64,000 nucleotides of DNA from Nageia nagi. Its lineage: Eukaryota > Plantae > Pinophyta. The translations under genes were made by a program, and so were the position numbers. Shown piece after piece: positions 3,962 through 57,969 of this stretch (within the stretch, counting starts at the first letter, position 1; each line of letters begins with the position of its first letter). A model generated the notes under the pieces. That model was not told the DNA's origin and made no database searches. It saw only the letters and a program-made list of their open reading frames with translations. The stretch covers positions 4,464,001 to 4,528,000 of the forward strand of contig JBITNC010000002.1 of NCBI GenBank assembly GCA_050084985.1, written 5' to 3'.

Positions 3962-4089
3962 TAGACTACTGGAGATAAAAATAAAATGTAAATTACAATA
4001 CTATATTTCACAATTCATAATTCTATCTACAAAATGAAAATGATAAAAAATTATTCCAATGCCAAATTAGAAATAAATAATTCTAATAT

Positions 4090-7000
4090 TATTAAGAACC
4101 CACAAGATCTGAAATGGGATTTAAGGAAAATAATTGAGAAATACGAGTAGCAACATATCTAAATGATGACAACAAAATGGCAATACAAATCAGAATAGTA
4201 GGAAGATCACAATAGAGAAACTTTACTAAAAGCAAAATGAATTGTGGGCTACTTCAAGGGGGCTACCTTCTTACAACCCAAAATAATATATATTTTCAAG
4301 ATAATGTCTATTCCCCTCCAACATATATTTATAGTTTTACCACCCTAACCCTAAGTGATCATTCAATACAAAATAGTGTTTCGCCTTACAAATCGTATTG
4401 ACCCCACCCTACAATTTAATATATGTCGATAATCTAATTAATTAACTAATATAATATAAGTAAATTCTGGTTCTTTTTATTTTGAGAGATATTTATAAGT
4501 ATGGTTGAAGCTACAGGAAAATCATGTATTCTTCTTGGAATTCCCTCTCGATCTATTATTAATCAACTTATTATTTCATGCAGTGTTGAACCACTTGTAT
4601 ATTCTCCCAAAGGATGCAAACTCTTCAAATATTTTGGAAGAGGCCAATTTTGTATGTCTTCAATATTTAGGGGATCCACCTTGATATCCTCTTCAGAAAT
4701 AATATGCTTGGGATACTCAAGCTCCTTACATCCAAAGGAACATTTGGAACGTTTGATATATAATTGGTGATCTTAAGAGGATTTTCAAGGTATGGTCTAA
4801 CTGGGACACGTGATCTAGCTCCCAAGTATTATTGTAGATCAAAATATCATCAAAGAAAAATAAAATAAATTTTCAAAGGTAAGGGTGAAATATCTAGTTC
4901 ATCAGACTCTAGAAGGTGGAAGGATCATTAGTAAGACCAAATGACATTACTAAACATGAATAGTGGGCTTCATATGTCCAAAAGGTATTTTTGGAATATC
5001 TTCTTCATGGAGCCTTATCTGATGGTACCTAGATCGAAGATCCAATTTTGATAAATATATAGCACCATGTAATTTATCCAACAATTCATCAATGATAGAA
5101 ATGGGAAACTTATCCTTTATTATGATTTTGTTCAAGACCAGAAATATGATGCACATGCACCATGACCCATCTTTCTTGTTAAGCAATAATACAAAAAAAG
5201 AGTAAGGACTTACACTAGGGAAATTATACCAGATTGTAACATATCTTGGACTAGTTTCTCAATTTCATCCTTTTGCAAACATAGGTAGAGGTAACATTGA
5301 ATGTTGGGTAGTTAACTCCCTGGAATCAGTTGGAAAGCATGACCATGGGGATGATGCAAGGGTAACCCATGCAATTTCTCAAAAATACCTATATGATGTA
5401 CCAATAATTTTTGTAGTTCTTGTAATTCTACAAGTCCTTTTCCTATCAGCTGAATGGAGAATTATTCCCTTGCCTCCTTTCTTAAGTAGTTTCTCTAAGC
5501 CAAGTGAACTAATAATTTTTGATGGCTTTAATCTTGTTCCCTTAAGAGTATATTTGTATCCCTTAACTGTAAATTACATTGAAAGCTCATAAAAATACTA
5601 GAGGATGGATCCTAATGTCATCAGCCACTACACACTGAGGACCAAATCATAGCCCCCTAATGGTAAGACATACATATCACTTTACATTTGGTAGTCACCT
5701 ATATTAAGCTTAAGATTATGACATTGTCCCTTGTAAGAAATTTTCCTCCATTCCCAATCATCATTTCATAATTGCTTTATGGGTGTATATAATAGTTTAT
5801 ATTTTTTTCCACTCCAAGATCAATAAAATTATGTGTACTCCTTAAATCAATCAAAACTATCAATGTTTTTCCCTTAAATTTTCCATGATATTTCATAGTT
5901 TGTGGTGATAAAAAACCTTATAGGGTATTGCAAGAAATTTAAGAATAACCTCAACAATTTACTCTGATTCCTCCACTATGTCTTCCATTATATCTTTAAA
6001 TATGTGCTTTGTTAGTTTGATGAGGGCATTAGCATCCAAGACATATAATTTTTTAGCAATGTATCAATGGCCTGACCTAAATTTCTCATCACAATTATAA
6101 CAAAGGTTCTTTTTCTTATGCTCCTCTATCTCTGCCAGAGTAAATCACTTGATTGGCAAGGAAGGATTTGGTTTTGGTCCACCTTGAGAATTATGTAATT
6201 TTCAAAATAGTTGCTTGGATTGTTTGCATTGGGCATTGAACTTATACTCCACTAATTTGGTGAGCATGATAGCTATTTTGATATTACCAAGATTGAACAT
6301 TTTGACTTCCACTTGAATTTCTTTCTTCATCCCACTAATGAAACAACGATGGAATAATTCTTCATCTAGTCCTTCAGTATGATTTGCAAGATTTTCAATT
6401 TGAGTTTGATATCCTCTTACTATGGTTATTTGGTGAAGTTTAGTGAGGACCCCTATAAAGTATTTAAAATCACTTGGGCCAAATCAAACAAGGAGGTTCT
6501 TTATGAAATCCCCCTAAGAAAGAAGGAATGCCATTTACCTTTTCAAATCACTGGTACCATTAGATAACTTCATGCACCAAATGAAATGAGGTGAGGTTGA
6601 CCTTTTTTACCTTAAGAATCTGATTCAAAGAGAAATATTATTCTACCTGATATATTTAGCTAATGGGTTCATCTCCATCAAATCATGGAAAATCCAGCTT
6701 GGTCATTTATGGAAGGAAAAAGGCTTGTTGTGGTCCTTGAGGTATGTTAAAGGCTTTCCTGATATATGTTTGAGATCCACTCAACCCACTTGAACCTGAT
6801 GATGTGTTTGCAGTTGATGGTTGTTAAAGAAGTTGCATGAGGTTTTTATTAAAGGAATTATAACTAGAAGTTATAGCTTCCATTGAATTTTTGAGTTCAT
6901 AAAGGGTAATTGGGAGGTGAATATCACCAATCAGTTTTTTCATCCAATCCATTCTCTTAGATAATTTGTCTAGATCCAAGAATCTTTTCCTGTAAGCCAT

Positions 7001-19461: not shown

Positions 19462-22400
19462 TGAAGATTTTGAAAATAAGAGAACAAATAATGTGTATAG
19501 CCAGAACATAGTGAGGCTAACCATAGGCGAAATAAATAGCAAGATAAATTTGAAGACCAAAATATATGTACTACAAAGAACTAAAATTTTTACAAGGCTC
19601 TTTTGAAGCTAACAAGAAAACATACACGGTTCTTTACTCTTCTCTTCCATCATATTACTTTTTATGCATAGGCTTTTTATCCTTATACTAAGATAAAATA
19701 TTATATGCCTAATACTTGGTCAAAACTACCATTAAATGCAACATGGCTCCATGCATGCATTTTTTCATCCTTTTTGCAAGGAGTAGAGGAAGCCCATGCC
19801 CTTGTATGCACAATGTTTAAAACACATTAAATGGTTACAAAAGGTAGATCAACCATGTTTGTACAAAAATGTTAATGTCAGTGTTCAAAAACTAGTGTCA
19901 GTGGTTGAGCATTTAATTTCGAGGTAGAAATACATTAGACGAACATTTTTGAAGTGTTAATACAAGTTCCGATGCAAGAGGGACATCATAGCACAATAAG
20001 ACCTGGGATCCAGGGTCTAAAATAGTTAGGTTGCTAACCCAAAATAGCAGGTGTTAATGATACCTGCAATTCAGAAGATAAAATGATGCCTGAATATAGA
20101 TCTCGAATTTCGGTAGTGCCCAGAGATAAATAGAACCTGGAGCTGATCAATAAGTCCCGAAGCTCGAGGTTAATAGAGCCAAAAGAACAATGCAGAGCAG
20201 ATCAATGGGAGTGAGAGATAGATCCTAGAATGAGAAGATGGTTCCCAAAGTGAGAGAGAGCCTAGTGGAAACAACAAGTGCAATCGAGAGAACACAAACT
20301 ACTAAGTCCCAATCTTCAAGAGGTAATTCCTTCAATCACCATATCTTGGAGCACAAGGTTTGTTACTACCCAAAGAAAAGACTATCATCTGGGAGTTTTG
20401 AGGATCATTAGTGTTTGGAGAGAAGATAGGAGTCAATAACAACCAGACAAGATATTAATATTTTCAATTGCCCCCTTAATCTCCATGTCAAAATGAGAAC
20501 ATTTTCTCTGTCAGCCAAAAAACACAAATACAAAAAAAACAAAGTTAAATACATATGAAATATATACAGAGTCCAACTAGTAGCCTGTGCTAGTCAAGGT
20601 TCATCAACATTTGCCTCCAGAATGTCTAAGGTTTGGACTCCAAGTTGGCTTCGAAGGTAGCAGAAATGATCCTTGGGAAATGGCTTTGTAAAGATGTCTG
20701 CAATTCAAGCATCAGAAGGATAGTGATGAAACTGGATAAATCCATCTTCGACCAAATCTCTCATAAAGTGATAGCGCATATCAATATGCTTTGTTCTATT
20801 GTGAAACACAGGGTTCTTGGTCATGGCAATCATGCTAAGATTATCATAATGCACTAAAATGGGGAGCTCAATATCCATTCCCAAATCTTCAAAGAGATAG
20901 GCAAGCTAAATGGCTTGTGTATAAGTGGTGGAGGCAGCAATTTACTTAACTTCTACTGATGAAAGTGCAATCATGGATTGCTTTTTACTGCTCCATGAGA
21001 CCAAAGATTCTCCAAAGAAGAATCCATACCCTGACATGCTCTTCCAATCATCAAAACAACTAGCCCAATTAGCATCTGTATAGGCTTGTAACATTGCCTA
21101 GTTTGATGATTTATACCAAAGCTCATATTAACATGTGCCACTCACATAACATAGGATCCACTTGGCTACAATCCAATGCATTTGATGTGGTGAGTGCATG
21201 AATCGGGCTACTTTGCTGACAAACATGATTTCCAATCTGATAGTAATGAGATACATAAGGCTACAAATCAAGTATCAGTACATAGTGGCATCAACATGTG
21301 GAGAGGAGTCTTCCTTCAATAGCTTGGCTCTGACAATTATTAGTGTATCAACAGGGCTACAATTTTGCATCTTGAAGCGGGCCAGCAAATCTTTCACATA
21401 TTTGGACTGAATGATCAAAATACCACTGGATGATTGCTTGACTTATAGGCCAAGGAAATAATTCCTCTCCAAAATCACTCATCTCAAATTCACTGATCAT
21501 AGCATTCTTGAATTGGTCTATCATAGCATCAGAGGTACTAGCAAAAATGATATCATCAACATACAAGCACATAATAAAGAAGTTGCTACCTTCAACTTTT
21601 GTGTATAGTGAGCTTTCCACTAAGCATTTTTGATAACTATTTTTTCGAAGATAACTATCAATCTAAGCGTACCATGCTCGAGATGTTTATTTAAGACCAT
21701 AGAAAGCCTTTTTGAGTTTATACACCTTGTCTGCTTGATCATGAATAATAAATCCATCAAGATGCTTAACATAAACAACCTCCTTTAAATATACATTAAA
21801 TAAAGTGAATTTGAAATCCATCTGATAGACTGTCAATTCAAAATGAGAGGAAAGTGCAAGCAGAGATCTCAGTCTCTGGTCGAGCCACCAACGCAAAAGT
21901 CTCATCATAATCTAGCTCTTCCTTCTGAACATATCCTTTAGCAACTAGACGAGCTTTGTGTTATGCAATACTCCCATCAATATTATGCTTCAATTTATAA
22001 ATCTACTTGACACCAATTACCTTTTTATCTTTGGGAGAAGGTACAAACTCTTAAGTGTCATTCTTCTGAATTTGCTCAATCTCATCTTCCATGGCTTTCT
22101 TCCAATCTTCATTAACAACAGCTTCAGTATATGAAGAAGGCTCAACAAATGAAGCCATTAATGCATAAGAGATATTTTCTTCTTGATTTCTAGCTCTAGT
22201 TTGTGATTGGATCATTCTTTTGTTGAGCTCCTTATCCAACATCAATGATGGAGGATGATAGCGATCACTTGTCCACTTATTTTTTATTGGTGGAGTATGA
22301 GCAGTAGGAGACTAGCTTGGCTATTCTCAGTGTGGTGAGCTAATGGCTGGTGAAGATGGTGATGAAGGTTGAGGAGGAGGAGGTGCAGTAGTGTGAGGAG

Positions 22401-25400
22401 ATTCACAATCTTCATCAAGTTGAAATCTAGTAGTGGTGTCTTCAATATCATTTTTTTGATTAGTTATTCCTCCTCCTTCAAAAATTACATCTTTGTTGAT
22501 GTGTATCTTACCAGTTAGTGGATCATAACATCTATAGGCCTTAGATGCTTCAGAGTATCCCACTAAAATGCATTTGATGGATTTCTCATCAAGCTTCTTT
22601 CTATTTTCTTTTGGCACATGCACACAACAAGTTGAGCCAAATATTTGGGGATAAGAAATGCTTAGTTGTACACCAAACCAAGCTTCATAAGGAGTGGTGT
22701 CCTTCAAAACTTGAGTGGGACACCTATTCAGAATATAAATAGCAATATGCACTACTTCACCCCAAAAACTAGTGGGAAGGCCTTTTTCTTTTATCATGCA
22801 TCTAGCCATCTCAACAACTATTCGATTTTTTTATTCAACCACTCCATTCTATTGTGGAGTGTAGGTAGTTGTATATCGCCTAACAATGCCATGCTAATGG
22901 CAAAAATTCTTAAATACATTCTAAATGAATTCTCCTCCTCTATCAGTTTTGAACTTCTTGATAAAATAGCCAAATTGTTTTTCAACAAGAGATTTAAATT
23001 TGACAAAACTCTCAAAAGAATCTTACTTGTTTTGCAGTAAATAAAGCCAGCTCATCTTAAAAAAGTCATCAGTAAAGATAAGCATATATCTTGACTTACC
23101 ACCTTGGTTGGAAGTTTGCATTGGTCTACATAGGTCTGCATGTACTAGCTAAAGAGGGTACTTAGCCCTGTTTTGGTGCTTTGAAAACTTCACTCTATGT
23201 TGCTTACTTGCCATGCAACTTTCACAGATCTCACTTGGTGTATGGGAGATGGCAGAAAGGCCTCTCACCAATTTATGCAAACCATTTAATGAGTGAAAAT
23301 TTAAATGACCAAATCTCTTATGCCATAACCAGGCATAATCAATGGATGCTTTTAAACAACTTGTTGCAAATGTCATCTTGAGCACATACATCCTATTTTC
23401 AATCATATGGATGGTGGCTATAAGCTGGTTAGTGGTCTCTTTTACTATGGTACACCCTTTCCTTCTGAAGGTGGTTATATAACCCCTTATACTAAGCTGA
23501 CCAATACTTAACAGATTATGCTTAACGCTAAGAACAAAAAGAATGCTTTGCATATAAAATATCTTACCAAATTTAGAATTAAAGGCAACAGTCCCTCTAC
23601 CGTGGATGTTGGCACTTTTGTTGTCACTAAACCTGACCTGGCCTATGACAGAGGTGTTAACATTAAAAAACAAGGCTTTGCTTCTAGTCATGTGGTTAGA
23701 GCATCCACTATCTAGGTACCATACATCTTCTTTTTCAACTTGAAAACTACTATAGGTGAGGAATGTGCTACTCTCGACTTGGTCCTCAACATACTAAGCT
23801 TTGAGCTTGGGATTCTTCTTCCAGCAATATGATTCTATGTGACCATCTTTGTTATAGAAGTCACAATGTATGGGAGTGTCACCTTGTGATCTTCCTCCAA
23901 AATGACCTCTTCCACAGCCTCTTCTACCTCTGCCTTGGCCACCACTACCACTTCTTCCATGAAATGATCCACCTCTTCCATGAGAGGATGAAGAAGAAGA
24001 ACTAAGATTTGATGAAGAGGGCTCTTGGCCCTTCATATTCAATTGTCCTTGGAAAGCATTGTCCAAAGACTCAACTCTATCACTAATTTTATATTCATAG
24101 CTATTTAGGCTACCCTACAACTTTGCAAGTATGAGTTGGGATAGGTCCTTTGCTTCTTCAATGGTAATGGTAATTGGATCAAATCTTTCGGGGAAGCTTC
24201 GGAGCATCTTTTCTACAATTCTAGTGTCTCCCATCTCTTCATCATGTGAATGGAGGGCATTTACAAGATGTTGGATCTTGGAAAAGAAAAAACTTATATT
24301 CTCTTCCTCTCTCATATGGAGCGATTTGAACTCCTTCCTTAACAGTTGGAGCTTTACCACATAAACCTTGACTGATCTTTTATATGCGATCTCCCATGCT
24401 TCCTTAGAAGTCTTACACTCTGCAATTTTGGGGAAGATGGACACATCTATCCCAGATTGGATAGCAAACAATGCATTGGCATCCTTCTTACGGTTCTCCA
24501 ACACTTCTTTCTTCTCATCTACAATCATGGCTGCAAAGGTGACTTTATTTGAGTTGTTAAAACCTTGGGAAACAAATGTCCGCAGGTCTTGAGAGATAAG
24601 AAATGTCTACATTCGAATGCACCAGTACTCGTAATGGTCTCTACTGAAAATGGGAATCTGCAATTGGAGTGAATTTCCTAGCTTGGAATCCATTTAACCT
24701 AATAAATCTCCCGCTCTGATACCAATTGAAGATTTTGAAAAGAACAGAACAAATAATGTGTATAGCCAGAACACAATGAGGCTAGCCATAAGCGGAATAA
24801 ACAGCAAGATAAATTTGGAGACCAAAATATATGTATTGCAAAAAGTAAAATTTTTACAAGGCTCTCTTGGAGCTAACATGAAAACATACAAAGTTCTTTA
24901 CTTTTGCTCCTCCATCATCGTACTTTTTACGCATAGGCTTTTTATCTTTATACTAAGATAAAATATTATATGTCTGCTACTTAATCAAAACTACTATTAA
25001 ATGTAGCATGGCTCCATGCACACATTTTGTTATCCTTTTGTAAGGAATAGAGGAAGCCCATGCCCTTGTATGCATGATGTTTCAAACACATTAAATGGTT
25101 GCAGAAATTAAATCAACCATTTTTGTACAAAAATGTTAATGCTGGTGTTCAGAAACTAGTATTGAGCATTTAATTCCGAGGTAGAAATCCCGTAGATGGA
25201 CGTTTTCAGAATATTAATTCAAATTTGAAAGATTTCAGGGGTCTAAAACGGTGAGGCTGCTCACCCAAAATAGCAGGTATTAACAATACCCGTAGTCCAG
25301 AAGACAAAACAGCACCCGAATATAGATCTCAGATTTCAGTAGTGCCCGGAGATAAATAGAAACATGAGTTTATCAATAAGTCCTGGAGCCCGGTGTCAAC

Positions 25401-42324: not shown

Positions 42325-43755
42325 TAAGCCATTCATGATGAGATGTATCATGATAAGAGGCTCCAGAGTCTAGTACCCAATAATTACTATTATTATTTAA
42401 TGATAAAATTATGGTATCCTCTAAAATTTCACCTGTAATATTTGCTTCATGATTAGTACCTTAACTCTTTTCATCCCTTTTTTCAACATTCTTCCTTTTC
42501 TAACACCACTTTTTTATGTGCCCTTTCTTAGTACAATACCATCACTCTATATTGCTCTTCCCTTTTGACTTTGATCTTCCTCTATATCTTCCTGTGCTTA
42601 GACTTCTTCCCCTCTTGTTCTATCTTCCTTTGTTCTCCACTGTTAATGTAGTTGATGAATTTGATTCACCTGAATATTTTATTCACATATCCTCACTTAG
42701 AATTACTCCAACAACATCATCAAATACCAATTTATTAGAACCAGATACAATATTACTACCATAACTAGATTATTCCAACTATTTGGTAAAGAGCATAAAA
42801 TAAGCAGAGCTCTAACCTTATCATCAAATTCAATTTCAATAGAGCATAATTAGTTTGTTACTCATTAAAATTATTAAGATGATCCTACACGAACTCACCT
42901 TCATTCATTTTCATATTGAATAACTTTTTCATCAAGAAAATTTTATTGTATGTAGAAGGTTTTTCACACAACCTAGTAAGGGCATCCATTACATCTTTTG
43001 TTGTTTTCTCCTTTGAGGTGTTGAAATCCACTTGGCTTCCCAACCATAATTGTATTATCCCTAAGGCCTTTTTTTCTAGCATCTCACATGCCTCAGCTAT
43101 CATACCAGATGGTTGCTTTGCTTTTCCACCTAAAGGAAGATATAGATCTTTTAGTAATAAATAATCTTCAATTTGCATTTTCCACAATGCAAATTTCTAC
43201 CCATTAAACTTGTCTACCTGAAACTTTGAATCCTCTTCCATTGCTCCCACTTGAAACTAATCCTTCTTGTTTCTAAGAACCCAACAAAAAAATGCTCTGA
43301 TACCAATTGTTGGGTTAACAAATTAATAATAGTAAATAATCCTGAAAAAAATTATAGAAATAATTCCAAAGCATTTAAGAAAAAAATAACACACAAATAA
43401 ATATACACAACATATATCAAGGTTCACCCAGAGTGGGCTACGTCCCTATAGAATTATCCATTCCTCTTTTTATTATCCTCCAAAGAGATCCACCTGTAGC
43501 AAAATAGTTGTAAACTTCCTCTATGGAATACAATAGAACCACACACACAAGTCTCTCATCAATTCTTATAACCCAAAATTTGCTAATCTCAAAATGCATG
43601 AAATAATAAATCCTAATCAAGATCCACTATTTGTGCCCTTATTTAGTTCTAACTGCAGTCTCTTACAATCTAAATAAACCATCATCCATCTAATCTTTAG
43701 TTCCCAAATTAGACAAATTAGATCTAATAGTTAACTCAGGCTCCAAAACTTATCA
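42325..43755 (-). mobile_element. Truncated Tnt1-like Ty1/Copia (5' LTR, PBS, gag, protease start)
   Basis: PBS gctctgatacca 43294-43305 next to an LTR starting TG at 43308. Gag KFNG*KFALWKMQIEDYL..KALGIIQLWL..NKIFLMKKLFNMKM and WVLDSGASYH at ~42350-42380. Outer LTR end uncertain. Confidence 0.85.
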
Positions 43756-45060: not shown

Positions 45061-48000
45061 CATCAATAGGCCTAAGATATATAGATGTAACCCAAAATTA
45101 GCCTACAACTCACACATGTCAAGAACCAATGATGGATTTAGACTAAAATGATTCTTAACTATAGGTGCATAGAAGGGAGAGTTGCATAACATCATCAATT
45201 TTATTATTAGATATTCCCTAATCATGATATAAATGCCTTCATCAAGCCCTAATAATGATCTTGGAATCATTAAATACTTCCTTGGACTCATTATAAACTT
45301 CCTTACTCTCAACCTCTCCTTAGTTGTAACATCCTCAACTCTCATGATCTTATCAAATTTCTAGTGATCTCTTCTTTCTCTTAATCTCTCACAATTTGTT
45401 GGTGCATCCTTTGCCTCTTCTCAAACCCAATATATTTGATATTATTAAGTGTGACATTTTAGAACTTAAATATTTATAATATACTTAAAGGTATCAAGGA
45501 TATGGGATTCGAGAACTAAAAGAGATTCAACTATTATTTTATAAATTTTTCAATAGCTTGTGTTGTAATATTATTAATTAACATCTATTAAACAATAATT
45601 TCTTTATTTTACTTTATTTATGATGTACCTTGATGGAGTATTATATATAATATTTGACCTTTAATGTATTATATTCTAACCTTCATTAGGATGAATATTG
45701 TGCATTCGACTTAGTCAAAAAAGAGTTATTACAAGAGGAACAAGGATAAGTAGAATTTTTTAAGTTTTTCATGATATTTTTTTTTCTATATATGGGATAG
45801 TTTTCATTTTTGTAATATGATGGTTTCAAGAATGAGGAAAGGATATGTTTACATATTTTATTACTAATTTTTGTCTCTTGAATGTGCTTTTTTATGGACA
45901 ACATTATTGGGTTCATGTTGTGTATTTATTCAAATATGCAAGTTGGTTGGTATTGTATTTATGATGTGCATCATGGATAGTTGTTTGATATTCCTAAAAT
46001 CAAATTTAGTTACACTTGTGTATGTTCATGATACAAGTTTGTTAGGTATCAACTGAAACTTTTGGAAGTTGCATAGATTTTAGAGATCTTAATAAGGCTT
46101 GTGCTAAAGATAAATTTCCTTTGACTCATATTGGTATGATTGTGGATTCTACTATTGGTAATGAAATTATCTTTTATGGATGTATTTTTAGGTTACAATC
46201 ATATCAAATTCAATAATGAAGATCAGCCTAAGACAACTTTACAACTCCTTGGGGTACATTTTGGTAGGTGATCTTGCCTTGTTGTCTCAAAAATATGGGA
46301 GCAACATATCAAAGAGTTATGGTAACTATGTTTCATTATTTAATTTATAAATCTATTGAAGTTCATGTTGATGATATTTTGCATAAATCTCATAAAAGAG
46401 ACAATCATTTAGAGGATATAAGAGTAATTTTTAAAAGAATGGGAAAATATAATCTTAAGCTCAATCCAAAGAAATATATTTTTGGATTTTCAAGTGTCAA
46501 ATTATTAGGCTATATTGTTTCAATAAGAGACATTGAAACGGATCATAAAAAGTTAAAGTTATTATGGATATGCCTCCTTAAAATAATATCAAACAACTTA
46601 GGATTTTGCAAGGAAATTTGTAGTCAATCAAGAGGTTTATTTCTCAATTGGTAGATAGGAAAACTCCTTTTTCTCATTTGCTCAAGAAGAGTATCAAGTT
46701 TACTTATAAGGAGGATTTTCAAAAGGCTTTGAAGATATTAAAAATGTATTTGCTTAATCCTCCTATGTTAACTCTTATTTATCATTCCAAGCCTTTTATA
46801 TTTGTATGTTTTAGCCACAAATCATGCCTTGGGGGTAGTTTTGGTTCAGAAAAATGAGGAAGCTAAAGAAAGGGTTGTGATTTATTTTTCTAAAACTTTG
46901 CAAGAGTATGATACAAGATATACTCTTATAGAAAAGTTATGTTATGCTATAATCCATGCAACTAAAAAAATTAAGGCTTTATATTATAATTAACATAACT
47001 TTTATAGTTGCTCAAGTTAATCCATTGAGGTATTTTCTCTCTAAGCCTTAATTTCATGGAAGACCAAAAAAATGGATTACAAAAATTGCAAGAATTTGAT
47101 CTTATTTACATGCATCAAAAAGTAATAAAGGTTCAATTCATTGCTGATATGTTAGTTGATGTACCTGGTGAAGATTCCACTCCATGTAAAGAATAGTTTC
47201 AAGATGAAATAATCGCTTGGGAAGAAGAAGTAGATAAATGGATGATTTATTTTGATGGTTCCAAGTGTATCAAATGAGTTGGAGTAAGTATTGTATCGAT
47301 GTACAAGGAAAATTTTAAGACCCCTCATCCAAAATGGACCTATGAATTCTAGGATAATGTAGATGAAACCTATTTCGAATTGAAAGTGAATTTCCAAAAA
47401 TAATGTAAATTGTTAGGCAAATTTTGAACAATTTTGAAAAATAGATGTAAAAAGTTGGAAAAAGTTTTTAGTTTTAAAAATCATAGTAAATTTTTGAAAT
47501 CATAAATCATTTATTATATATATACATTGAATGACTAAAATTTTTATACAAAGTAGTCTTTCCACCATGGATGATGTCTCTTGGTAGCGCTCAAACTTTT
47601 TGAGATTTAGGTGCAAGGGAAAAGTGGAAATCTAATAACTTTATCAAATATAAAGCTTAGTAGACTCCAATATTACAAATATGATTGAAAACTACAACAT
47701 CTCCTTCACTCAAAAAATATGATCTTCAATCTCCAGCTTGAATGGAATTAGAATTCCTTATAACTACAATGAATTTTTATTGTAGTTGTTTCCACCATGG
47801 AAGATGTCTCCTCTAGGTTGTTGTAATCATGGGGCATAGGGGAATACATCCTTCACACCTATACAAAAGTCAAGAACGAACCAACATTAGGAAATATTCG
47901 AGAATAGAGTTTCAAAATAAAATTTTATCATATTATCCTACAAATTAATTAAGTAAAAAGAATTATATACATAATATTTAATATGATGAAAAAGATTGAC

Positions 48001-48414
48001 TTAAAATGAAACCATAAAATTATTACCAACTTGTTGCCAACCATATCTAATTGAAATTATAAGAAACCTCCATACATTTTTTCTATGAATAATTTCTTCC
48101 TATTCTGGATAGTGTTTCAAAATAATCTTTATCATTATTTGAAACTCTATCCTTAACCAAGTTGAAAATATTCATCTACTATTCTTAGGGATCATTCTTC
48201 ACTAAGCACTACCTAAAAATGAATGAGAGATTGTGTTAAAATGAATTACAAGTCTATGTTTTATAGAAGGGTTTCAATCAGGACTTATCATTCAAACTGA
48301 CAAAAATACCATAATCTAACATATGATAAGACATTTCATGCATGGAAGAGACATATCACATGTGAAAGAGATATATCACACATGCAAATATACAAAGTAT
48401 AGTTATAATGAATT

Positions 48415-48720
48415 TGAATTAGTTGTAACTGGTCCAAATGCATTTTGAATGCAATTTGATTGGTTGCATTCCAAATACATTTGGATTGGCTACAATTGGT
48501 CTAGATGCATTTTGATTGTACTTTGTACATTTACACATTACATTCTACATCCATATAGAATGGGTGCATTCTGAATGCATCCATACCAATTGTATCTAGA
48601 ATTGGTGCATTCTAAATGCATCTAGCCCAATTGCATTTAGAATGCATTTGGCTCGGTTGCATTTAGAATGCATCTAGACTAGCTGGAACCTGAATGCAAC
48701 CAAACTAGTTTTGCCAAGAA
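48415..48720. repeat. Degenerate TGCA-rich, partly palindromic repeat array upstream of the accessory gene
   Basis: Recurring tgcattctgaatgca, tgcatttagaatgcatctag and ccaattgca/ggttgca units. Confidence 0.8.
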
Positions 48721-48917
48721 TTAAATGCTACATATAATGCATGAATACATTGATGACATGTATCCAAATATGTAGTGTAATTAATTACCCCTCTATATAT
48801 ATGCTAGATACTATTCAATTCAACTCATATTAACAGAGAGCATTCTACAAAGAGGAAAGGAACCATAGAAAGAGGGTTAGAAACTTAATAGGAAATATAA
48901 TATTGAATAATTAGGAA

Positions 48918-51625
48918 ATGGAAAATACCTACAATGGATCTAGAGGTAGGAGAAAGGGTATTGACTTCAAGTCTCACCCAACCAATGATTTGATTCTTCT
49001 ATTGGAACAAATGGATGATTTAGGTATGTAATGGGTGCACAACTCATCTTTCCACGGGTTGATCTATATGCTTGAAATTCCTATAGAGAATACACCATTG
49101 GATAATATTGTTAAGAATTATGATGTTAACAACAATTCAATGACTATGGTATAAAAGAAGAAGAATTTTACTTTCTCCTTCAACCCTGAAGACATAGCTT
49201 GCTTAACTGGATTACCATTTTAAGGAGAAGAGCTTGTCCATTTCCATATACTCATCAACAATTAAGATAAATGCTAGCTTGAGAAGCATTATAATGTGAA
49301 TACAAATTTCTTACAAGGTATGATTTTATTTTTTGGAATACTAATTTTTTTATAGTTTAATTTCATTCAACTAATTCATTTTAAATATTCATAATTTTGT
49401 TGTTTAATCTTTAGTGATTTTTCAAAAGATGAAAATGGGCCTTCTGATGTCTTCTATAAAGGATGAATTTATCAAGACTTACATGGATTTTTTTATTTAT
49501 ATATTGGTTCTTTAGGGAAAAATAGTTGATATGCCTTTTTGGGTTGTATCTTATCTTATACGTTCCTTTAATGGGACTCGATTTGATTGGTCATCCTATA
49601 TTTCATCTAAGATAAAGAATGAGTTGATTAGAGTAAAAATAGGTTTGAAAAAGGTACATATGACTAATTTCATTCTTTCCTTGTACTATGAGGTATTATT
49701 TCATTTGAATCAAACACCAGCACGTACATCACACCATCAAATGATTATGAAGATAAGTCTATCTCCTATATAGCTACAGGTTTGTTGCATCCAATTTTAG
49801 TATAAAATTTATAAACCTTAATGTTTTATATATTTTAATACTATTAATTAAATGCATTTTATTTAAAAAAAAATTTGATCTTGTGAAGGATAGAAGGGAA
49901 GTTGATGTGAGAGGAAAATGGCCAAAGAAAGTTCAAGGAGAATCTGACACAACATCTTAAGCTCCTAGTTCTCGAATTGAATCTCAGAAGCATCATACAA
50001 CTAGTAGATAGATGCATGTCATTGATTCTAAGATAGATGAAGAGGATGCTGAAGAGAAATATTTCATTCCTCCTCAAAAATAGCCATAATATATGCCTAC
50101 ATAGGAGAAGGAAGGTAAAAATTAAAATTGTATTTAGTTGAACCAAAATTATCTTAGATAATGATTAAAATTCCTTGATACAAATTCGATTACTAAAATA
50201 ATAGTTCATGATATACCCCCATTGGTAGTCATTCATGGACCAAATGTTCAAGACAATCCAAGTACACCATCATATCAAACACCTAGTATGAAATTTTTAT
50301 TGATTTAGTTATTTTTATTTCTCATCTTTTAAACATGTTTGGTGGATTTAAATAAACTATAACTTTTTTTGTAGTAATCCATATACAGAAAATACCATAG
50401 TGGAAGGGTAAATCTTTATTACCACCACCACCATAATAAAGAATGAGAGGAAGTATCCCTCCACTTGGGCAAGCACAAGGAAAAAGTCATCAAGATATTT
50501 TTACTATTGAAAGCCATGTTACTTTTCCCCATATGTGTTATGGCCTCGAGGTGCTAGATGATAGTTTATGAAATATAAAGATTGATTATTTGGATGATTC
50601 TAGTTTGGATAATATATTTGCATAATATCATGGCACACATTTTGTTACTAGTGCACCAATAGTTGAGGTGCAAGATGCAATTGGATAGGAGAAGCTTGTG
50701 TCCAAAGAGCCTGAACCCACTACAAAATTTGATAGATAAGAAACCCTCTCGACATCTCATGAAAAGATGACCAAAGAATTAAGACATTATACTTTACATT
50801 TAAAAAATTCAATTGATGTGGGAGAGGCTATCTTGAAAAATATCAATCAATTTCTCATTCTAGATTTGAAAAAATTAAGTGTTTGGGAGAAATGAAAATT
50901 AACATTGATCTAAGAGATAAATGCCCGATGTCACAATCATGATCATAGGGACAATTTGTATAAGGTTGTTGTACAAAACTCAATTATCATTGATTCTTTG
51001 ATGAAAGATGCAAAGGAAGGGATTTTTAAGGTTCAAAAGAGAACATCTAATGATGTTCTGAAGATGGCTTTGGATAGGCTAGAAAACATCAATACTAAAG
51101 CCCAAGTTTATCTTGACAAATGGACATATCACCAAAAATTATTGAATACATCAAATGCAAAAAAATAGAGATATGATGTAAGTTTTAACATTTAAAATTA
51201 AAATTATATTTTCATGGTATTTTTCATAATTTTTTGAAATTATACTAATAGTTTCAATTTTGAATGCAAATAAGATATGAAAACTTAAAGAACATAGCGA
51301 AAGTGATGCAATAATATTTCAAAAATGCAAAGGCCTTCCTACTTGAATTGGTGGAGCAAAGAAAAAATGTTGATCAAATTCAATAGGAAAATTGAATTTT
51401 AAAATTGATCATCCAAGAACACAACATGGATTACAAGATTCTACTGAAGAAGAAAGCTAAGTACTTCATCTATGTAATTCAATACTATTGATCCAACAAA
51501 GGAAAAGAATAATCTTCTTTCAAAAATAGATTTAGTTGTTATTGATCTATAAAAGGGAAATTATTTGAGAGAGAAACTCAAGAGTATGTAGAAGCATTAG
51601 TCTTCGTTCAACAACCATTGGCTTG
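48918..51625 (+). pseudogene. Spliced accessory gene of the transposon: plant-mobile-domain (PMD)/DUF1985-like N-terminus and coiled-coil-like C-terminus
   Basis: TATA-like tatatata at ~48794 and ATG at 48918. FHGLIYMLEIP..LDNIVKNYD....FSFNPEDIACLTGLPF*GE (motif at ~49188-49229) and RFDWSSYISSKIKNEL. GT donors at 49318, 49780, ~50116 and ~51178, with AT-rich introns. Several stops. Confidence 0.6.
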
Positions 51626-51971
51626 AAGTGGGAGATCTTTTTAGTTTTAATTAAATATTATCAATTTGGAAATGTGGGAGGCTTACCATTTTATATGAAA
51701 GAATTTTATATAAATTATTATATCATTTTGGATTATGTATTTAAATATTAGATTATGGTAATTGGTAAATGGTTTTGATGTTATTATCCTTTTAAAATCA
51801 TGGTTTTACAATCTAATTAGAATATTGAAAACCTATTTACTTGATTGCAAATTTGTAATAGTTTTCTTTGGTATTAGTTTTCTTTAGTAGCTAATAAATT
51901 TGATTTTAAATTTGTAATTTTCTTAACTTATTGTATGATGTTTGATGATATATTTTTTCTAACAAGAAAAA

Positions 51972-52230
51972 AGAGTTGTAGCCAGTTTGAATGCAAGATA
52001 TTGCAACTGGTTCAAATGCATATAAATGCATCGGACCTAGCTGTAATTACTTGCACCTAACCTAGATGTAATTAAATGTAATTGGGATAGTTGCAACAAC
52101 ATGTCATCGAGTCGGTTACATTTTCATGTAGCTGGATTGGTTGCATGTTGTCAAAATTGGTCTGGTTACAACTACATGCATCTGAACTAGCTACATCAAC
52201 TTGCAATCAACCCAGCTACAACTACATGCT
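51972..52230. repeat. Second TGCA-rich array, between the 3' ends of the two transposon genes
   Basis: ttgcaactggttcaaatgcatataaatgcatcggacctagctgta, ggttgcatg, ccagctacaactacatgc; same motif family as 48415-48720. Confidence 0.7.
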
Positions 52231-52499
52231 AATCATATCACATACAATTTACAAATGCTCACTTACAAAAAATAAAAGTAAAATAAAAATATCATATACA
52301 GTTTACTACATGCTAATCATATAATATATATTTTGGAACTTAAAGTAAAAAAAAAAATCATTTATATAATCAAATAATAGTTCAAATTACACATTACACA
52401 TAGAAAATTTGAGATTCAAAAATGTTAATTAATATCACAAAACCTTTCAACTATTATGAAATTAAAACACATTATATAAATAATGGATTTAATTAACAA

Positions 52500-54685
52500 A
52501 AGTAAAATAAATACACATTTGCACTTTCTTCATCTTCATATTCATCTTCTTCTTGCATATGAAATAATCGCTTTTAAACAATTTGCTAGTAAAACTCATC
52601 TTTGTAAATTGCTTTTAAACAATTTTTGATACTTTTGCAATTTTATTCTTACATAAAAAATGAAATGATCAAATAATTATGATGTTATAGGCATTTATTC
52701 TAAACCTTCAGCATAAATATCATCTATATTGTAATAACAATGCATCAAAATCAATTTATCATGAACACATATACAAAGGTTACCCATGACATCAAATTTT
52801 AAGAAACTTTTTGGATGTTTCAAATCAATGATAGATTTCCATGCCTCAAATCTATCATCCATAAAGTTATCCCTACTAAGATACAAGTTGTCTACAATAA
52901 GACAAGTATATTTTCTTACCCTTACAAAATCAACAATATAAATGTGTCTTGTTTGAGCTATTTTTATCACATTGTTCATTTCCTTCAACATTGGTAGAAT
53001 TCCACATAAAGTGAGTAACATTTCAATATCTGTTAGCATGTACAATATATCTTTTGATTTGCCAAATTCTATTTGATTTTACCATATATACCCACTTAAT
53101 GAGATATATTCTCTGCATACTCTTAGTGCGGGTAGATACATAGACATCCATCTAGTATCAATATTGTTAATCATTTTTTTACCATCTATTATACCCTCAA
53201 CAAATTGTACAATCCTCTTTGAACTATGTACAAAATAAGAATGAATATCATGAACCAATTCCTCCACCTTAACAACATTTTTAAAATTATTAACTATTTT
53301 GTATGAAAGATTCATTCTATGTGCCATCTAATGAATTGCTATCATGTATGGAGTATAGGTTGTTTAAATTTTAACATAAAGTCCATTTTTATTTCCTTGC
53401 ATTAAAAATACACCATCAAGCCCAACACATATCAACTTCATAGTTATGTCATAATTTTCCATCTTTGCTATGTCCTTTAGACAACTAACAACAAGATTGC
53501 ATAAATTTTCAGCATTGCAACTTTGTGACATTTTTTGGACTGCTAGCAAGTGAGGTTGTCTCATGTGTTCAAATTCTTGGAAGGCATAAACATGTAAATA
53601 AACCCAAGATGTATGATCAACAACAATAACTTCATCTAAGGATAATGAAATAAATTTTGTATCTCTTACCTTTTCTTGCAAATCTTGCATCTCAATAGTC
53701 GTAATACTATTTGCAATATCCCATGCACTACTCTCAAACTAATGATATTATGGTAATTTGAAATTTTGTATACTAAAAAAATACAAAAAATTCTTTGTAA
53801 AATGAAATATCTGAAATAGGCCTACCATTTTTTAAAATTTGAAATACAACTAAAAATTGTACAATCTTAGCAATTAGATTTTCCTAATTCACTTTGTCTA
53901 TATATTGATTTATTGTTCCAACTCTTTCAAAAATCTTCTTTTTTATATTCATCTCATTTTCATACATCTTCTAATTTTTTTGATTAAGGCATTTTATCTT
54001 ATCTTTTTTCAATACAACCCTTTTTTGCTTACCATCTACATCTTAATACTCATATTTTTTCTCATAATGTTTTTGAATTGTATCTTTTTTTAGTTGCATT
54101 TTGTGTTCTTTTTTTTGTGGCCCAAATGCAACATACGCACCTACATTTAGTAAGTTTTTTCAAACTATTTTTAGGAATTAAAAGTTGTATTCAAGGATAT
54201 GTTCCTACCCATTCATCCTAAAATGTTCTACCTGTAACCCATTTGCTTTTTATCTTTCTATTGGATGACTTTTTGTTACTTATGTGTTCTTGAGATCCTT
54301 TCTTATTATCATCACTCTTGTTAGCAGGTTCTTGCTCATTGGGAGTAATATTGGGTTGAAATTCATCCAACAGTTCATCATCATATATATCTTCTTCAAG
54401 GGGAGTCACATTTGATGTATTTTTTGTAACAAAATATTTCTACTTTTAATGGATAGAAAACTATATTAATTAAATAGTACAATTTACAATCAACTTAAAA
54501 TACACATTTAAAATGAATGTACCTTCTACAATAGGAGTTAGCTGCTGCACCTTTTTTGGTTGTTTAAAATATAAAAAATTGCTTTTAGATTTTGTGGAAG
54601 TACCTCCTATAACACCTCTGTTACCACTAAGCTTTACATCACTCTTAAGAGAGGATGGGATTTTATCTAAACCAAGTGTAGACAT
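52500..54685 (-). pseudogene. ZNF862/C17orf113-like hAT transposase (decayed, at least one intron)
   Basis: KFISLSLDEVIVVDHTSWVYLHVY, LICVGLDGVFLMQGNKNGL, IH*MAHRMNL (CxxH position), YFVHSSKR, IDTRWMSMY, LCGILPMLKEMNNVIKIAQ. Putative exon 1 at 54523-54685. No C-terminal hATC dimerisation domain recognised. Confidence 0.8.
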
Positions 54686-54772
54686 TTCTTCCTATATGAA
54701 TGCAAGTTGCAAAAAAATGCTTATGAAATGAAGACAAGTTATGCACAAATACAAGTTTTGACTTGGTTTCAT

Positions 54773-54980
54773 AGGAAAAGCTTCTAAATTGATTGCAAAG
54801 GAAATGCTTTCAACCTAAATGTAGAGAAAATACTCCTAACTTGGTTGTAGAGAAAATGATTTCAACCTAGATGTAGTGAAAATGTTCCTTACCCTACTGT
54901 AGAGGAAATGCTTCTAACCTGATTACAAAGGAAATGCTTCTAACTTAGCTACAAAGGAAATGCTTCAAACCTAGTTGCAA
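54773..54980. repeat. Tandem array of 8 x 26 bp just upstream of the transposase ATG
   Basis: Units such as aggaaatgcttctaacctgattacaa, agaaaatactcctaacttggttgtag and aggaaatgcttcaaacctagttgcaa, in exact 26-bp register. Confidence 0.9.
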
Positions 54981-57969
54981 CTTCTTATATGTAGGTTCCA
55001 ACCCAAATTCAAGTTTATGTTAAATATAACTTTCGATCCAATTGTAGAAATATGGTTCTGATGTCACAATATGATGGCATGGGATCATCTGGATAAGGGA
55101 TTTTGATATTTATATATATGCTAACCTATAAGTGACTATTTAGGTGATATTATTTATTGTTTTTATAATTTCAATTCGAATGAGCTAAATTAAGTTTAGG
55201 AAAAAGGGCTAATATATTTGAAATCATGTTGAAAGATTGGCTACATGGTTTAAGAATATAAATTTTTTTTATAAAATTTTGGATCTAAGGCAAGACCCAC
55301 CATGAGCTATACTAGCCAAATCAAAAAGTGAAAATCTAGAATTATAATCTTGATTTGCCAATTTTCTCCTTTAAATTTTCCATATCGATGTCTCCTCAAG
55401 GTGGAATTATTCCTTTGGCATATAAGTTTAGTTTTGAATGCACAAATAATATAGTTGAGTATGAGGATTTAATTTAGGGTTTTAAGATTTATATTAACTT
55501 AAATATTAAAAATCTTCAAGTTTATGGTAATTCTATGTTAATTATAACTCAGATAAATGAATTTTACAATGCAAAAGATGAAAAGTTTTGACCTTATAAT
55601 GAGTGAGTCATGAAAATAGTATCAAGATGTTTTATAAAAGTGGTGTTTGATAATATTCCAAGTAATAATGGTATATTTTTTGATGTTATGGATAATGAAG
55701 CTTATTTAACTCCAATTATAATTCAAGATGTAGGAACATTGATAATGATTAATAACCTTAAGAGTACCTCTATGGTAGATGAGAAATTCTTTTTTGAATT
55801 CTTTGAAAAAGAGCAAGTTATGTGTGCTTTTCTTTATTTTTGATGATCTAAAACTTCCTCATAAATGGCACAATCCATGAAGAGTAAAAATAAGGATATA
55901 AGAAGAAAATTTTTGAAAGGATAGTAGCAAGGTATGTAATTATTGGTGATGTTAATTATAAAAGATCTTTTGAAGGTGTTATGCTTAGATTTTTAAGAGA
56001 AGAATAAACTAAGAAAGTAATGGAACAAGTTCATGATGATCAAAGTGGAGTTCATTTCAATAGTAAGGCTATTTTTCCTAAGCTTTTGAAATTAGGATAA
56101 TATTGACCATCATGTAAAGGAAGTGTGCTCTTCATGTTAAGAAATATGAGAAATATCAAAAGCATGCTAATATTAGATTAGCTCCATCTCAAGAGTTGAC
56201 TATAATGATTTCACCTTGGCCATTTTATATTTAGGACTTAGATTTAGTTGGAGTAATTAATCCTAAGTCTAAAAAGGTTCATAAGTTTATTTTGGTTGTA
56301 ATTGAAAATTTCACAAAATGGGCAAAGGTTGGTCCATTAAGATCCTCAAATTGTGAAGTTTTTGATTGATAATATCATTGCTAGGTTTAGAGTTCCATTT
56401 CATATTATTATGGATAATGGAAAGACTCTTATAAGTAAGCATGTAAGGTAATTTTGTAAAGGATTCAAGATTAAGAAAAAGTTTTCTTCAACATATTATC
56501 CACAAGGTAATGGTTAGGTAGAAGCTATAAATAAGACTATCATTAACATCATTTGCAAAATAGTAAAGAAGCATCAAAGAGATTTACATGAGAAATTGGT
56601 GTATACATTATGGGTATATAGAACTAGTATTAGATTAGCAACTAGTTGTAATCCACTTTCATTGGTATATGGATATGAGGTTTTCCTTCTATTAGAATTA
56701 CAAATTCCATATTTAAGGTTGTCTTTGGTGGGAATAGTAGATATGGAAGAGAAAAGAAAAGCAAGATTGATACAATTAAAGGGATTGGATGAGAACAAAT
56801 TGATGCATGGGAGCATCTCAAAATGTATTAGAAAAGGACCAGGACAACATATGCTAAGAAGATCAAGCAAAGGGAGATTCAAATTGGTTATTAAATCCTT
56901 AAAAATAATCATCATAAGGAAAAGGCTGAAAAGGGGGATAAAGATAAATTTGAGTAATTGGATTGGTCCTTACATCATTGGTGCTAGGTATTCAAATGTA
57001 TCATATAAATTAAGAAATGTAGATGGGAAAGAAGATAAGTTTTCAACTGCTTTTATTCATTTGAAGCCCTTTTATGCATGAAATAGGTCATTCATGCGTA
57101 GTTTATTTTTCAAGTGTATTTAGTATATTCTTTAAACGTATAAGATGTATTATTTAGTTTAGATTATTTTATGTTATGTCAATGTTAGCACTACTTTGTA
57201 TGAATTTTTTTAAGGATAACTTAGAATTCACGTTGGTATATTTGTATGATTTATATTATTTGGAAGAATTGTTAATTATTTGATTAAGAGATGTCCTTTT
57301 TTATTATAAAAAATTAAATAATAATTGATTGAAAAATACTAGATAGTTACATTCCTAGTTGAGAGTAGTAATTCATTCACTTAATGCTATAGAAAAATTA
57401 GAAGTCTTAGGCATAAAAGAAATAATTTGTTAGTATGATTCAATTATCCCAAGTATGTTCATAAAATTTTAAGTTTATTGAGTTAAGAGTAACTTTGTGT
57501 TGATGCTTCTTCTAGAGTTAATGCTAGACATAGCATTTACGCTAGGGGTCCTAGGCTTCCAAAGGTAAGTATAGGTATTATTTTTTGATATCTCCCAATT
57601 TTCTTTAAATGCATTAATAAAAATATTTTTTTATTTTATAATTATAATAGTTTTAGTACTATTTTATTTATAATACTCAACATTGGTGCTTCTATAATTG
57701 TTAGCATTGGGGCATTTGATATTTTTGGGTTTGGATTTCAAGACCTAGGGTATGCCCTCAAGCATTTGGAAAAAGAAAAATTTCTAAATCTCAATCCTTT
57801 ATGGTTATGAAGTTATATTTAATTATGATTATATGTTTATGAATATTATTATGATTGTATTTAATATACCCTTGATTTGTAAGAGAAATAAATCAATCAT
57901 CTATTGGGATATTTACATCAATATCTTATGCTCTTTATAATCTCATGTTATTTATGATCTCATTATTTC

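What the first reader, a model, noticed from the sequence alone, without database searches (positions are those of the whole stretch)
47302..55382. Two-gene hAT-like transposon carrying a PMD-like accessory gene and shared internal motif arrays: candidate VANC-like anti-silencing system
Seen in the sequence: one TSD-bounded 8.1-kb insertion (tatcgatg both sides, restoring the host RNase H frame on removal). It holds a ZNF862-like hAT transposase on the minus strand, a convergent intron-containing gene with PMD-like motifs (EDIACLTGLP.GE, FDWSSYI), and three motif arrays, one in each large non-coding interval. Established knowledge: hAT elements normally encode only a transposase. PMD domains (MAIN/MAIL family) are described with Mutator-like and Ty3/Gypsy elements and act in silencing control. 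Arabidopsis VANDAL MULEs encode VANC proteins that bind short motifs in internal tandem repeats to remove methylation. Inference: this could be an independent hAT lineage whose accessory protein binds its own arrays, for anti-silencing or transposition. This copy is dead.
Basis: partly seen in the sequence, partly recalled or inferred. Interest (0 to 1): 0.9.

Follow-up and report, generated by a model that had tools for sequence, protein, structure and literature searches.

The report
Dead two-gene hAT transposon copy
This is a decayed copy of an abundant plant cut-and-paste (hAT) transposon that carries a second gene, probably of the PMD/DUF1985 type, and three related 26-bp repeat arrays; hAT elements are not known to have this layout, but the second gene's identity rests on weak evidence.

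Summary
The structure is real. An 8,081-bp block (47302-55382) lies between two copies of TATCGATG. Removing it restores the reading frame of a Ty3/gypsy RNase H.

The minus-strand gene is a broken hAT transposase. It is 49-52% identical to a Taxus protein. A family profile hits Hermes, and a modelled relative matches Hermes by Foldseek at E 2.4e-9. The C-terminal third, including the hAT dimerisation domain, was not detected in this copy.

Three arrays (48383-48712, 51974-52223, 54742-54977) share a 26-nt period and one core motif.

The plus-strand gene is far more broken. No stop-free piece hit Pfam, the PDB or the protein databases. The ESM Atlas gave only weak leads (DUF1985 0.82, PMD 0.77). 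By eye it shows about nine collinear blocks matching published PMD-C motifs, with the right spacing.

Contigs from four DNA runs cover both gene regions in large numbers. I found no internal TIR/TSD. The scan's first readers noted the same two-gene layout at five other places in this genome; those notes are unchecked.

Verdict: a two-gene hAT family is likely, PMD identity is probable but unproven, and the VANC-like anti-silencing role is untested. It is a new variant of a known kind. This copy is dead.

The parts
47294..47301 (.). Left target-site duplication, TATCGATG
   Evidence: Identical to 55383-55390. The following T is also shared, so 8 or 9 bp.
55383..55390 (.). Right target-site duplication, TATCGATG
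   Evidence: Removing 47302-55389 restores the host RNase H frame.
47302..55382 (.). The whole inserted element, 8,081 bp
   Evidence: There is no other copy in the window.
47302..47319 (+). Left terminal inverted repeat, imperfect
   Evidence: It shares GGAAAATTT..AAG with the reverse complement of the right end. The left end has about 4 extra bases.
55366..55382 (-). Right terminal inverted repeat, imperfect
48383..48712 (.). Array A1: 26-nt period, units in both orientations, upstream of the plus-strand gene
   Evidence: 6 core matches. Contig depth is low here in all four runs.
48918..51168 (+). Putative accessory gene, PMD/DUF1985-like and heavily broken. The limits are approximate and the intron positions are not verified.
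   Evidence: Translations. By-eye collinear blocks against PMD-C motifs. Atlas leads. No Pfam, PDB or homologue hits.
49032..49250 (+). N-terminal PMD-like blocks: SSFHGL..LDNIVKNY, then FNPEDIACLTGLPF*GEELV
   Evidence: compared by eye with LISALVERW and TLEDIALLLGLGIDGKPVIG of PMD-C.
49408..49770 (+). Central PMD-like blocks: SSIKDEF, FFIYILV, VVSYL..FDWSS, LFHLN. There is one in-frame stop at 49513.
   Evidence: The distance from W to HLN is 38 residues here and 37 in MAIL2.
50165..50568 (+). C-terminal PMD-like blocks: LD..KIIVH.IP and ESHVTFPHMCYGL
   Evidence: compared by eye with LD..DVVWLPY and ERHLPDRCRKQF. These are the weakest blocks.
51974..52223 (.). Array A2: the same unit family, with an internal inverted symmetry. 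It lies between the two genes or inside the 3' part of the transposase gene.
   Evidence: 3 core matches. This stretch has the lowest contig depth.
52698..54691 (-). hAT transposase gene, broken. Homology was detected from 54156 to 52761.
   Evidence: 192 hits, best 5.9e-31; local tblastn 1e-67 to Taxus protein P0002; the SLDE, LDG, AHRMNL and TRW motifs are kept; the family matches Hermes and Dimer_Tnp_hAT.
51444..51657 (-). Possible remnant of the hAT C-terminal dimerisation region. Weak, seen by eye only.
   Evidence: FP..(19 residues)..ER.L spacing seen. Contig depth peaks at 51300-51500. Not supported by Pfam or by the family HMM.
54742..54977 (+). Array A3: about 9 units of 26 nt, all in plus orientation, just upstream of the transposase start
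   Evidence: 4 core matches.

Best explanation
This is a dead, mutated copy of a high-copy hAT transposon family inserted into the RNase H region of a Ty3/gypsy element.

The family's unit appears to hold two convergent genes. One is a Hermes-type hAT transposase, which would cut and paste the element and make the 8-bp duplication. The other is a protein of the PMD/DUF1985 kind. Three arrays of one 26-bp unit (core AATGCWTCTRRMC) lie upstream of each gene and between them.

The most likely working model is as follows. The PMD-like protein is a sequence-specific DNA- or chromatin-associated factor made by the element. It recognises the dense arrays on copies of its own family and keeps their two promoters free of repressive chromatin (DNA methylation or H3K27me3). 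VANC does this on VANDAL repeats, and MAIL1/MAIN/MAIL2 do it at their promoter motifs.

Shown here: the insertion, the hAT transposase, the arrays, and the high copy number of both halves.

Inferred: the PMD identity, that the two genes form one unit in active copies, and the whole binding and anti-silencing step.

My odds: two-gene unit about 0.65, PMD/DUF1985 kinship about 0.6, array-binding anti-silencing role about 0.3.
For: - TSD and host-frame restoration.
- hAT identity. The model of relative P0015 (pLDDT 84) matches Hermes at E 2.4e-9.
- Arrays share period and core and are confined to the element.
- Arrays with the same unit lie on both sides of the second gene, and no TIR plus 8-10-bp TSD pair encloses it. 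The only exact candidate lies inside the arrays themselves.
- 837 to 5,493 contigs per run from four DNA runs lie on 48300-54299 at 80% identity or more. They cover the second gene, the spacers and the transposase. The arrays are poorly covered, as expected for fast-changing repeats.
- About nine collinear blocks match PMD-C motifs, with matching spacing.
- Atlas leads: DUF1985 0.82 and 0.81, PMD 0.77.
- Literature: PMD-C is structurally like the VANC DUF1985 domain, and TE-encoded PMD-C proteins are proposed as anti-silencers. VANC binds dense same-orientation motifs in variable tandem repeats in non-coding parts of its own element (PMC5735166).
- First-reader notes report the same layout at five other sites in this genome (unchecked).
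Against: - No statistical support for PMD. Pfam found nothing on any stop-free piece, even at E 10. No database homologue was found for two pieces. The second Atlas query gave unrelated families. The PDB gave nothing.
- The block comparison was made by eye after the motifs had been seen.
- The plus-strand gene is more broken than the transposase.
- The transposase lacks a detectable C-terminal third, so an internal rearrangement cannot be excluded.
- No contig was shown to bridge array A2, so linkage of the two genes in other copies was not shown directly here.
- Contig depth is not copy number.
- No RNA evidence.
- Nothing was tested about binding or chromatin.
Confidence: 0.45

Rival explanations
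1. The element is a true two-gene hAT, but the arrays are transposase-binding or structural internal repeats, like the subterminal repeats of Ac and other hATs. The second protein would then help transposition or its regulation in another way, as MURB, TNPA or PIF ORF1 do. It would not be an array-binding anti-silencer.
For: - hAT and CACTA elements commonly carry repeated transposase-binding motifs near their ends (established knowledge).
- A3 lies 400-640 bp from the right end, and A1 and A2 contain units in both orientations.
- Accessory proteins that bind the transposase are known in MULE, CACTA and PIF (PMC12973397).
Against: - A1 lies 1.1 kb from the left end and A2 is central. Neither is subterminal.
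- The arrays sit just upstream of each gene, like VANC targets.
- PMD-C proteins associate with specific promoter motifs.
Confidence: 0.2
2. The second gene is a passenger. It would be either a host or other-transposon PMD gene fragment captured by one hAT sub-lineage (transduplication), or a remnant of another element joined to a truncated hAT by nesting or rearrangement. It then spread as dead cargo with no function for the element.
For: - The plus-strand gene has many more stops per kb than the transposase.
- The transposase C-terminus is missing exactly where the second region begins.
- Gene capture by DNA transposons is common, and PMD genes were captured twice by MULEs (PMC5418596).
- A first-reader note reports Pack-type hATs in this genome.
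Against: - Homologous arrays flank the region on both sides.
- There is no internal TIR/TSD.
- The spacers 51200-51900 and 52300-52700 are as abundant as the genes.
- The listed private substitutions are about equally dense in both halves: 24 in 2.7 kb against 16 in 1.6 kb. This is a biased sample of 40 out of 2,240.
- Several independent notes describe the same architecture in diverged elements (unchecked).
Confidence: 0.2
3. There is no PMD-like gene. The plus-strand 'gene' is non-coding or unrelated internal sequence of the family, and the PMD-like strings are chance matches picked by eye in AT-rich DNA.
For: - No hit in Pfam, PDB or two homologue searches.
- Atlas scores are below the level at which a third of shuffled proteins also score.
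- Long stop-free stretches also occur in clearly non-coding frames.
Against: - About nine blocks lie in the right order with near-exact spacing over 1.4 kb.
- Pfam also failed on short pieces of the host RNase H, which is real. Silence on short broken pieces therefore means little.
- DUF1985 and PMD, two related plant transposon domains, both appear among the Atlas leads.
Confidence: 0.12

Closest known systems
hAT superfamily transposons (Ac, Tam3, Hermes; the DUF4371-type lineage)
   Same: 8-bp target duplication, short imperfect TIRs, and a transposase homologous to a family whose profile and model match Hermes. The SLDE, LDG, AHR.NL and TRW motifs are kept.
   Different: Described hAT elements encode only a transposase. 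This one has a second, convergent coding region and large internal arrays. The copy lacks a detectable hAT dimerisation domain. The nearest full-length relatives are green-algal proteins at about 30-36% identity.
VANDAL (MULE) elements with VANC (DUF1985) anti-silencing proteins
   Same: A DNA transposon with an extra gene of a fold family reported to be related to PMD. Dense arrays of a short motif lie in non-coding regions upstream of and between its genes, and the arrays appear to vary between copies.
   Different: The transposase is hAT, not MuDR-type. The arrays have 26-bp units with some inverted units. There is no VANB-like gene. Binding and hypomethylation were not tested.
PMD-C proteins: MAIN, MAIL1, MAIL2, and PMD fused to MULE transposases
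   Same: Collinear blocks resemble the PMD-C motifs. PMD-C proteins act at specific DNA motifs and oppose Polycomb silencing.
   Different: Known transposon-borne PMDs are in Ty3/gypsy elements or fused to MULE transposases in angiosperms. Here it would be a separate gene in a hAT. The best named transposase relative comes from a gymnosperm (Taxus). Membership is not established statistically.
Two-gene DNA transposons: MuDR (MURA/MURB), En/Spm (TNPD/TNPA), PIF/Harbinger
   Same: A transposase plus an accessory gene. The convergent arrangement recalls MuDR.
   Different: A different superfamily, and an accessory protein of a different kind.

Membership tests
hAT superfamily | 8-bp target-site duplication | tested here: met
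   TATCGATG on both sides, with the host frame restored on removal. A ninth shared base makes 9 bp possible.
hAT superfamily | Transposase with the Hermes-type RNase H-like catalytic core and inserted helical domain | tested here: met
   The window pieces align to the family at E down to 1e-67, with the SLDE, LDG, AHR.NL and TRW motifs kept. The model of relative P0015 matches Hermes at Foldseek E 2.4e-9, probability 1.00, TM 0.60-0.66.
hAT superfamily | C-terminal hAT dimerisation domain (PF05699) | tested here: inconclusive
   Present in relatives: 3 of 19 hit Pfam, and the family profile hits Hermes at 6e-4. Not detected in this copy. Only weak candidates were seen by eye.
hAT superfamily | Short terminal inverted repeats | tested here: inconclusive
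   GGAAAATTT plus AAG is shared at both ends, but with an indel at the tip.
PMD (PF10536) | Match to the Pfam profile at the gathering score | tested here: not met
   No hit for any stop-free piece, even at E 10. The pieces are 22-85 aa and broken. Pfam also missed short pieces of the real host RNase H, so the test is insensitive. The joined model could not be searched.
PMD (PF10536) | Conserved PMD-C blocks in order: LISALVERW, TLEDIA.LLGL..DG, WLKD.F, YLLYLVG, YLPLF.DF...WG, YHLN, LD...W.PY, H.PDRC..QF | tested here: inconclusive
   All were found in order and with similar spacing on the plus strand from 49032 to 50568. This was a by-eye comparison with the sequences in Nicolau et al. 2020, S9 Table. 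No score could be computed.
PMD / DUF1985 fold | Predicted fold like MAIL1 PMD-C or VANC DUF1985 | not testable with these tools
Atlas feature scores were 0.82 and 0.81 (DUF1985) and 0.77 (PMD), which are leads only.
VANC-type anti-silencing system | The protein binds arrayed motifs of its own element and removes repressive marks | not testable with these tools
   Only the DNA side was seen: dense arrays upstream of and between the genes, poorly conserved between copies.
VANDAL / MULE | MuDR-type transposase | tested here: not met
   The transposase is hAT.

The most novel reading that the evidence does not exclude
A hAT lineage, abundant in this plant genome and possibly a gymnosperm's, independently acquired a stand-alone PMD/DUF1985-type gene together with co-evolving 26-bp arrays at both of its promoters. 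It would thus have arrived at a VANC-like, family-specific anti-silencing module in a transposon superfamily thought to encode only a transposase.
Probability: 0.25. Interest if true: 0.8.

Novelty: new variant of a known kind. Interest (0 to 1): 0.6.

Why it matters
hAT elements are taken to be single-gene transposons. In the papers I read, PMD domains on mobile DNA are reported with Ty3/gypsy elements and MULEs, and sequence-specific anti-silencing is known only from VANDAL MULEs.

A high-copy hAT family with its own PMD-like gene and matching arrays would be a second, independent case of a transposon carrying a family-specific chromatin countermeasure. It would also offer a natural system to test the current proposal that transposon-encoded PMD proteins counteract silencing.

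This particular copy is dead, so the value lies in the family, not in this locus.

Tried and rejected
1. Pfam on 30-odd stop-free pieces of both strands gave nothing relevant. The control on host RNase H pieces was also blank.
2. The search for homologous proteins was blank for 49516-49770 and 50914-51165. It gave one 70-aa fragment for the transposase piece.
3. The second ESM Atlas query (49032-49151) returned pentaxin and lectin clusters, which I treat as noise.
4. The PDB sequence search with the 85-aa piece found nothing.
Other copies, such as the Taxus locus, could not be fetched, and linkage of the two genes could not be checked directly.
6. I searched for the missing transposase C-terminus by tblastn and with a family HMM. 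The HMM was run on six-frame translations with X at stops, and on sliding windows across the whole window. The top score was 12 bits, on the plus strand at 48271-48351, and is not significant. The candidates at 47503-47631(-) and 51444-51657(-) were seen by eye only.
7. The idea that 47803-47838 is a captured piece of host RNase H was rejected. The match has E 0.46.
8. A 230-bp tandem duplication in 47500-48400 was rejected. Only a 40-nt motif is repeated.
9. A nested element around the second gene was rejected as far as TIR plus 8-10-bp TSD pairs can show. There were 13 loose candidates against 3-7 in shuffles, and the only exact one is array self-similarity.
10. tblastx of the second gene against the rest of the window found nothing.
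11. Literature searches found no hAT with a PMD or second gene. This does not prove that none has been described.

Full report
**The insertion.** The window is AT-rich plant nuclear DNA at about 31% GC. It also holds a phytocyanin-like ORF and copia and Ty3/gypsy remnants. TATCGATG occurs at 47294-47301 and again at 55383-55390. The next base, T, is also shared, so the duplication is 8 or possibly 9 bp. Joining the flanks with one copy of the repeat gives an uninterrupted RNase H-like frame across the junction. RVT_1 (46268-46651) and RT_RNaseH (46802-46990) lie just upstream in the same orientation. So 47302-55382 is one inserted block in a Ty3/gypsy pol gene. The ends share GGAAAATTT..AAG in inverted orientation with an indel at the tip, which makes a weak TIR. 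No second copy lies in the window.

**The transposase.**
- Six-frame translation shows long stop-free pieces on the minus strand.
- The 124-aa piece 53367-53738 found 192 proteins at E 1e-3 or better among 1.8 billion representatives. The best is a Taxus chinensis hypothetical protein at 52% identity. The full-length relatives are green-algal, and UniRef names one of them a DUF4371 protein.
- Local tblastn places the homology at 54156 to 52761, equal to residues 41-500 of the 741-aa relative P0015.
- The window pieces keep the SLDE, LDG, AHRMNL and TRW motifs.
- Pfam finds Dimer_Tnp_hAT in 3 of 19 family members. A family profile hits Hermes at E 6e-4.
- An AlphaFold model of P0015 (pLDDT 84) matches Hermes by Foldseek at E 2.4e-9 with TM 0.60-0.66.
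- The gene is therefore a hAT transposase, broken by at least five stops or frameshifts.
- Its C-terminal 240 or so residues, including the family motif GSVEDERTFS, were not found anywhere in the element. For the local HMM scans I read frames through stops with X.
- Weak candidates seen by eye exist at 51444-51657(-), 47503-47631(-) and 48271-48351(+). None has statistical support, and Pfam is blank on them.

**The arrays.** TRF and the repeat finder report arrays at 48383-48712, 51974-52223 and 54742-54977, all with a 26-nt period. Laid out in rows of 26, the units of A1 and A3 stay in phase. Representative units from the three arrays share AATGCaTCTaaCCTAGcTaCA in the plus orientation. A1 and A2 also hold inverted units. 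The pattern AATGCWTCTRRMCYW, with up to 2 mismatches, gives 23 matches in 64 kb against 9.2 expected. No shuffle out of 100 reached 23. Fifteen matches lie in the element and 13 lie in the arrays. A3 sits just upstream of the transposase start. A1 sits upstream of the plus-strand coding region. A2 lies between the two genes, or within the 3' part of the transposase gene.

**The second gene: tool results.**
The joined, spliced model was not searched.
- Pfam gave nothing for any piece, even at E 10. Pfam was equally blank on 26-37-aa pieces of the genuine host RNase H, so this silence carries little weight.
- Two homologue searches were blank, and so was a PDB search.
- For residues 1-48 of the 85-aa piece, the ESM Atlas listed DUF1985 clusters at 0.82 and 0.81 and a PMD cluster at 0.77. 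All are below the 0.9 level, so they are leads only. A second piece gave unrelated families.

**The second gene: comparison by eye.** I read the PMD-C motif sequences published by Nicolau et al. 2020 (PMC7156037, S9 Table) and compared them by eye with the translations. The following pairs occur in the same order:

| Window | PMD-C |
|---|---|
| LDNIVKNY | LISALVERW |
| FNPEDIACLTGLPF*GEELV | TLEDIALLLGLGIDGKPVIG |
| SSIKDEF | SWLKDNF |
| FFIYILV | YLLYLVG |
| VVSYL..F..GTRFDWSS | VPVMYLPLFEDF..GTFAWGAA |
| LFHLN | YYHLN |
| LD....KIIVH.IP | LD....DVVWLPY |
| ESHVTFPHMCYGL | ERHLPDRCRKQFDL |

LFHLN lies 38 residues after the W, against 37 for YYHLN in MAIL2. This is suggestive. It was done after the motifs had been seen, and no score could be computed because the published sequences could not be entered into a tool. 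I put PMD/DUF1985 kinship at about 0.6.

**One element or two?**
- Indirect evidence comes from four DNA runs. At 80% identity or more, 837-5,493 contigs per run lie on 48300-54299. They cover the second gene, the spacers at 51200-51900 and 52300-52700, and the transposase. Summed depth over the second gene is about a third to a half of that over the transposase.
- The arrays are thinly covered in all four runs.
- One run has a contig identical to the window. No piece was shown to bridge A2, and depth from contigs is not copy number.
- A scan for TIR plus 8-10-bp TSD pairs enclosing the second gene found only array self-similarity.
- The same array unit lies on both sides of the second gene.
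- The scan's first readers noted the same two-gene hAT layout at five other places in this genome (s1-847865, s1-845830, s1-844670, s1-844078, s1-846862). So the scan has found this before on other DNA. Those notes are unchecked, and I could not check them.
- Overall I put a genuine two-gene family at about 0.65.

**Mechanism and comparison with known systems.**
- VANC proteins (DUF1985) of VANDAL MULEs bind short motifs arrayed at high density in one orientation. These motifs lie in non-coding parts of their own family, often in fast-changing tandem repeats, and VANC binding causes loss of methylation (PMC5735166).
- MAIL1/MAIN and MAIL2 (PMD-C) associate with specific promoter motifs and block H3K27me3. 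Their predicted fold resembles the VANC DUF1985 domain, and the authors propose that transposon-encoded PMD-C proteins are Polycomb anti-silencers (bioRxiv 10.1101/2024.09.27.615353).
- In the papers I read, PMD domains on mobile DNA are reported with Ty3/gypsy elements and MULEs (PMC5418596; PMC12973397). I found no report of a hAT with a PMD or a second gene.
- Three rivals remain. The arrays may be transposase-binding sites. The second gene may be dead cargo. The PMD resemblance may be chance.

**Verdict.** This is a real, dead copy of an abundant hAT family with an unusual extra coding region and arrays. It is probably a new variant of a known kind. The decisive work is on intact copies elsewhere in the genome. 

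Noticed in passing
window 1460-1876 (+): An ORF with a plastocyanin-like (Cu_bind_like) domain at E 5.8e-20. It is probably an exon of a host phytocyanin gene.
   Followed up: no
window 22327-24528 (-) and 42888-43187 (-): Copia-type retrotransposon pieces: SH3_retrovirus, Pol_BBD, gag_pre-integrs and Retrotran_gag_2.
   Followed up: no
window 47539-47580 and 47771-47810: A roughly 40-nt motif ending in TTTCCACCATGGAWGATGTCTC is repeated 230 bp apart in the left kilobase of the element. Alignment score 45, against a shuffle maximum of 32. Its role is unknown. On the minus strand it reads ETSSMVE.
   Followed up: partly
window 54115: In all four DNA runs, many contigs stop matching the window just to the right of 54115 and share another sequence there (table 7). 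This copy differs from most of the family near the transposase N-terminus.
   Followed up: no
window 48300-54299: Differences between this copy and the family contigs are dominated by transitions: C>T and G>A, then A>G and T>C (table 1). This is as expected for an old, methylated repeat.
   Followed up: no
protein cluster of P0080: A cluster of Haematococcus hAT fragments also holds a record filed under a bacterium (Bosea sp., WP_444604897.1, contig of 1,500 bp). This is probably algal contamination of a bacterial assembly.
   Followed up: no
relatives of the transposase: Apart from one Taxus protein, all named relatives are green-algal (Chlamydomonas, Nannochloris, Haematococcus). No angiosperm protein was among the twenty clusters I looked up. 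The lineage may be absent from or rare in angiosperms.
   Followed up: partly
window 47302-48299: The left kilobase of the element was outside the 6-kb stretch laid with reads. Whether it belongs to the family consensus is not known.
   Followed up: no
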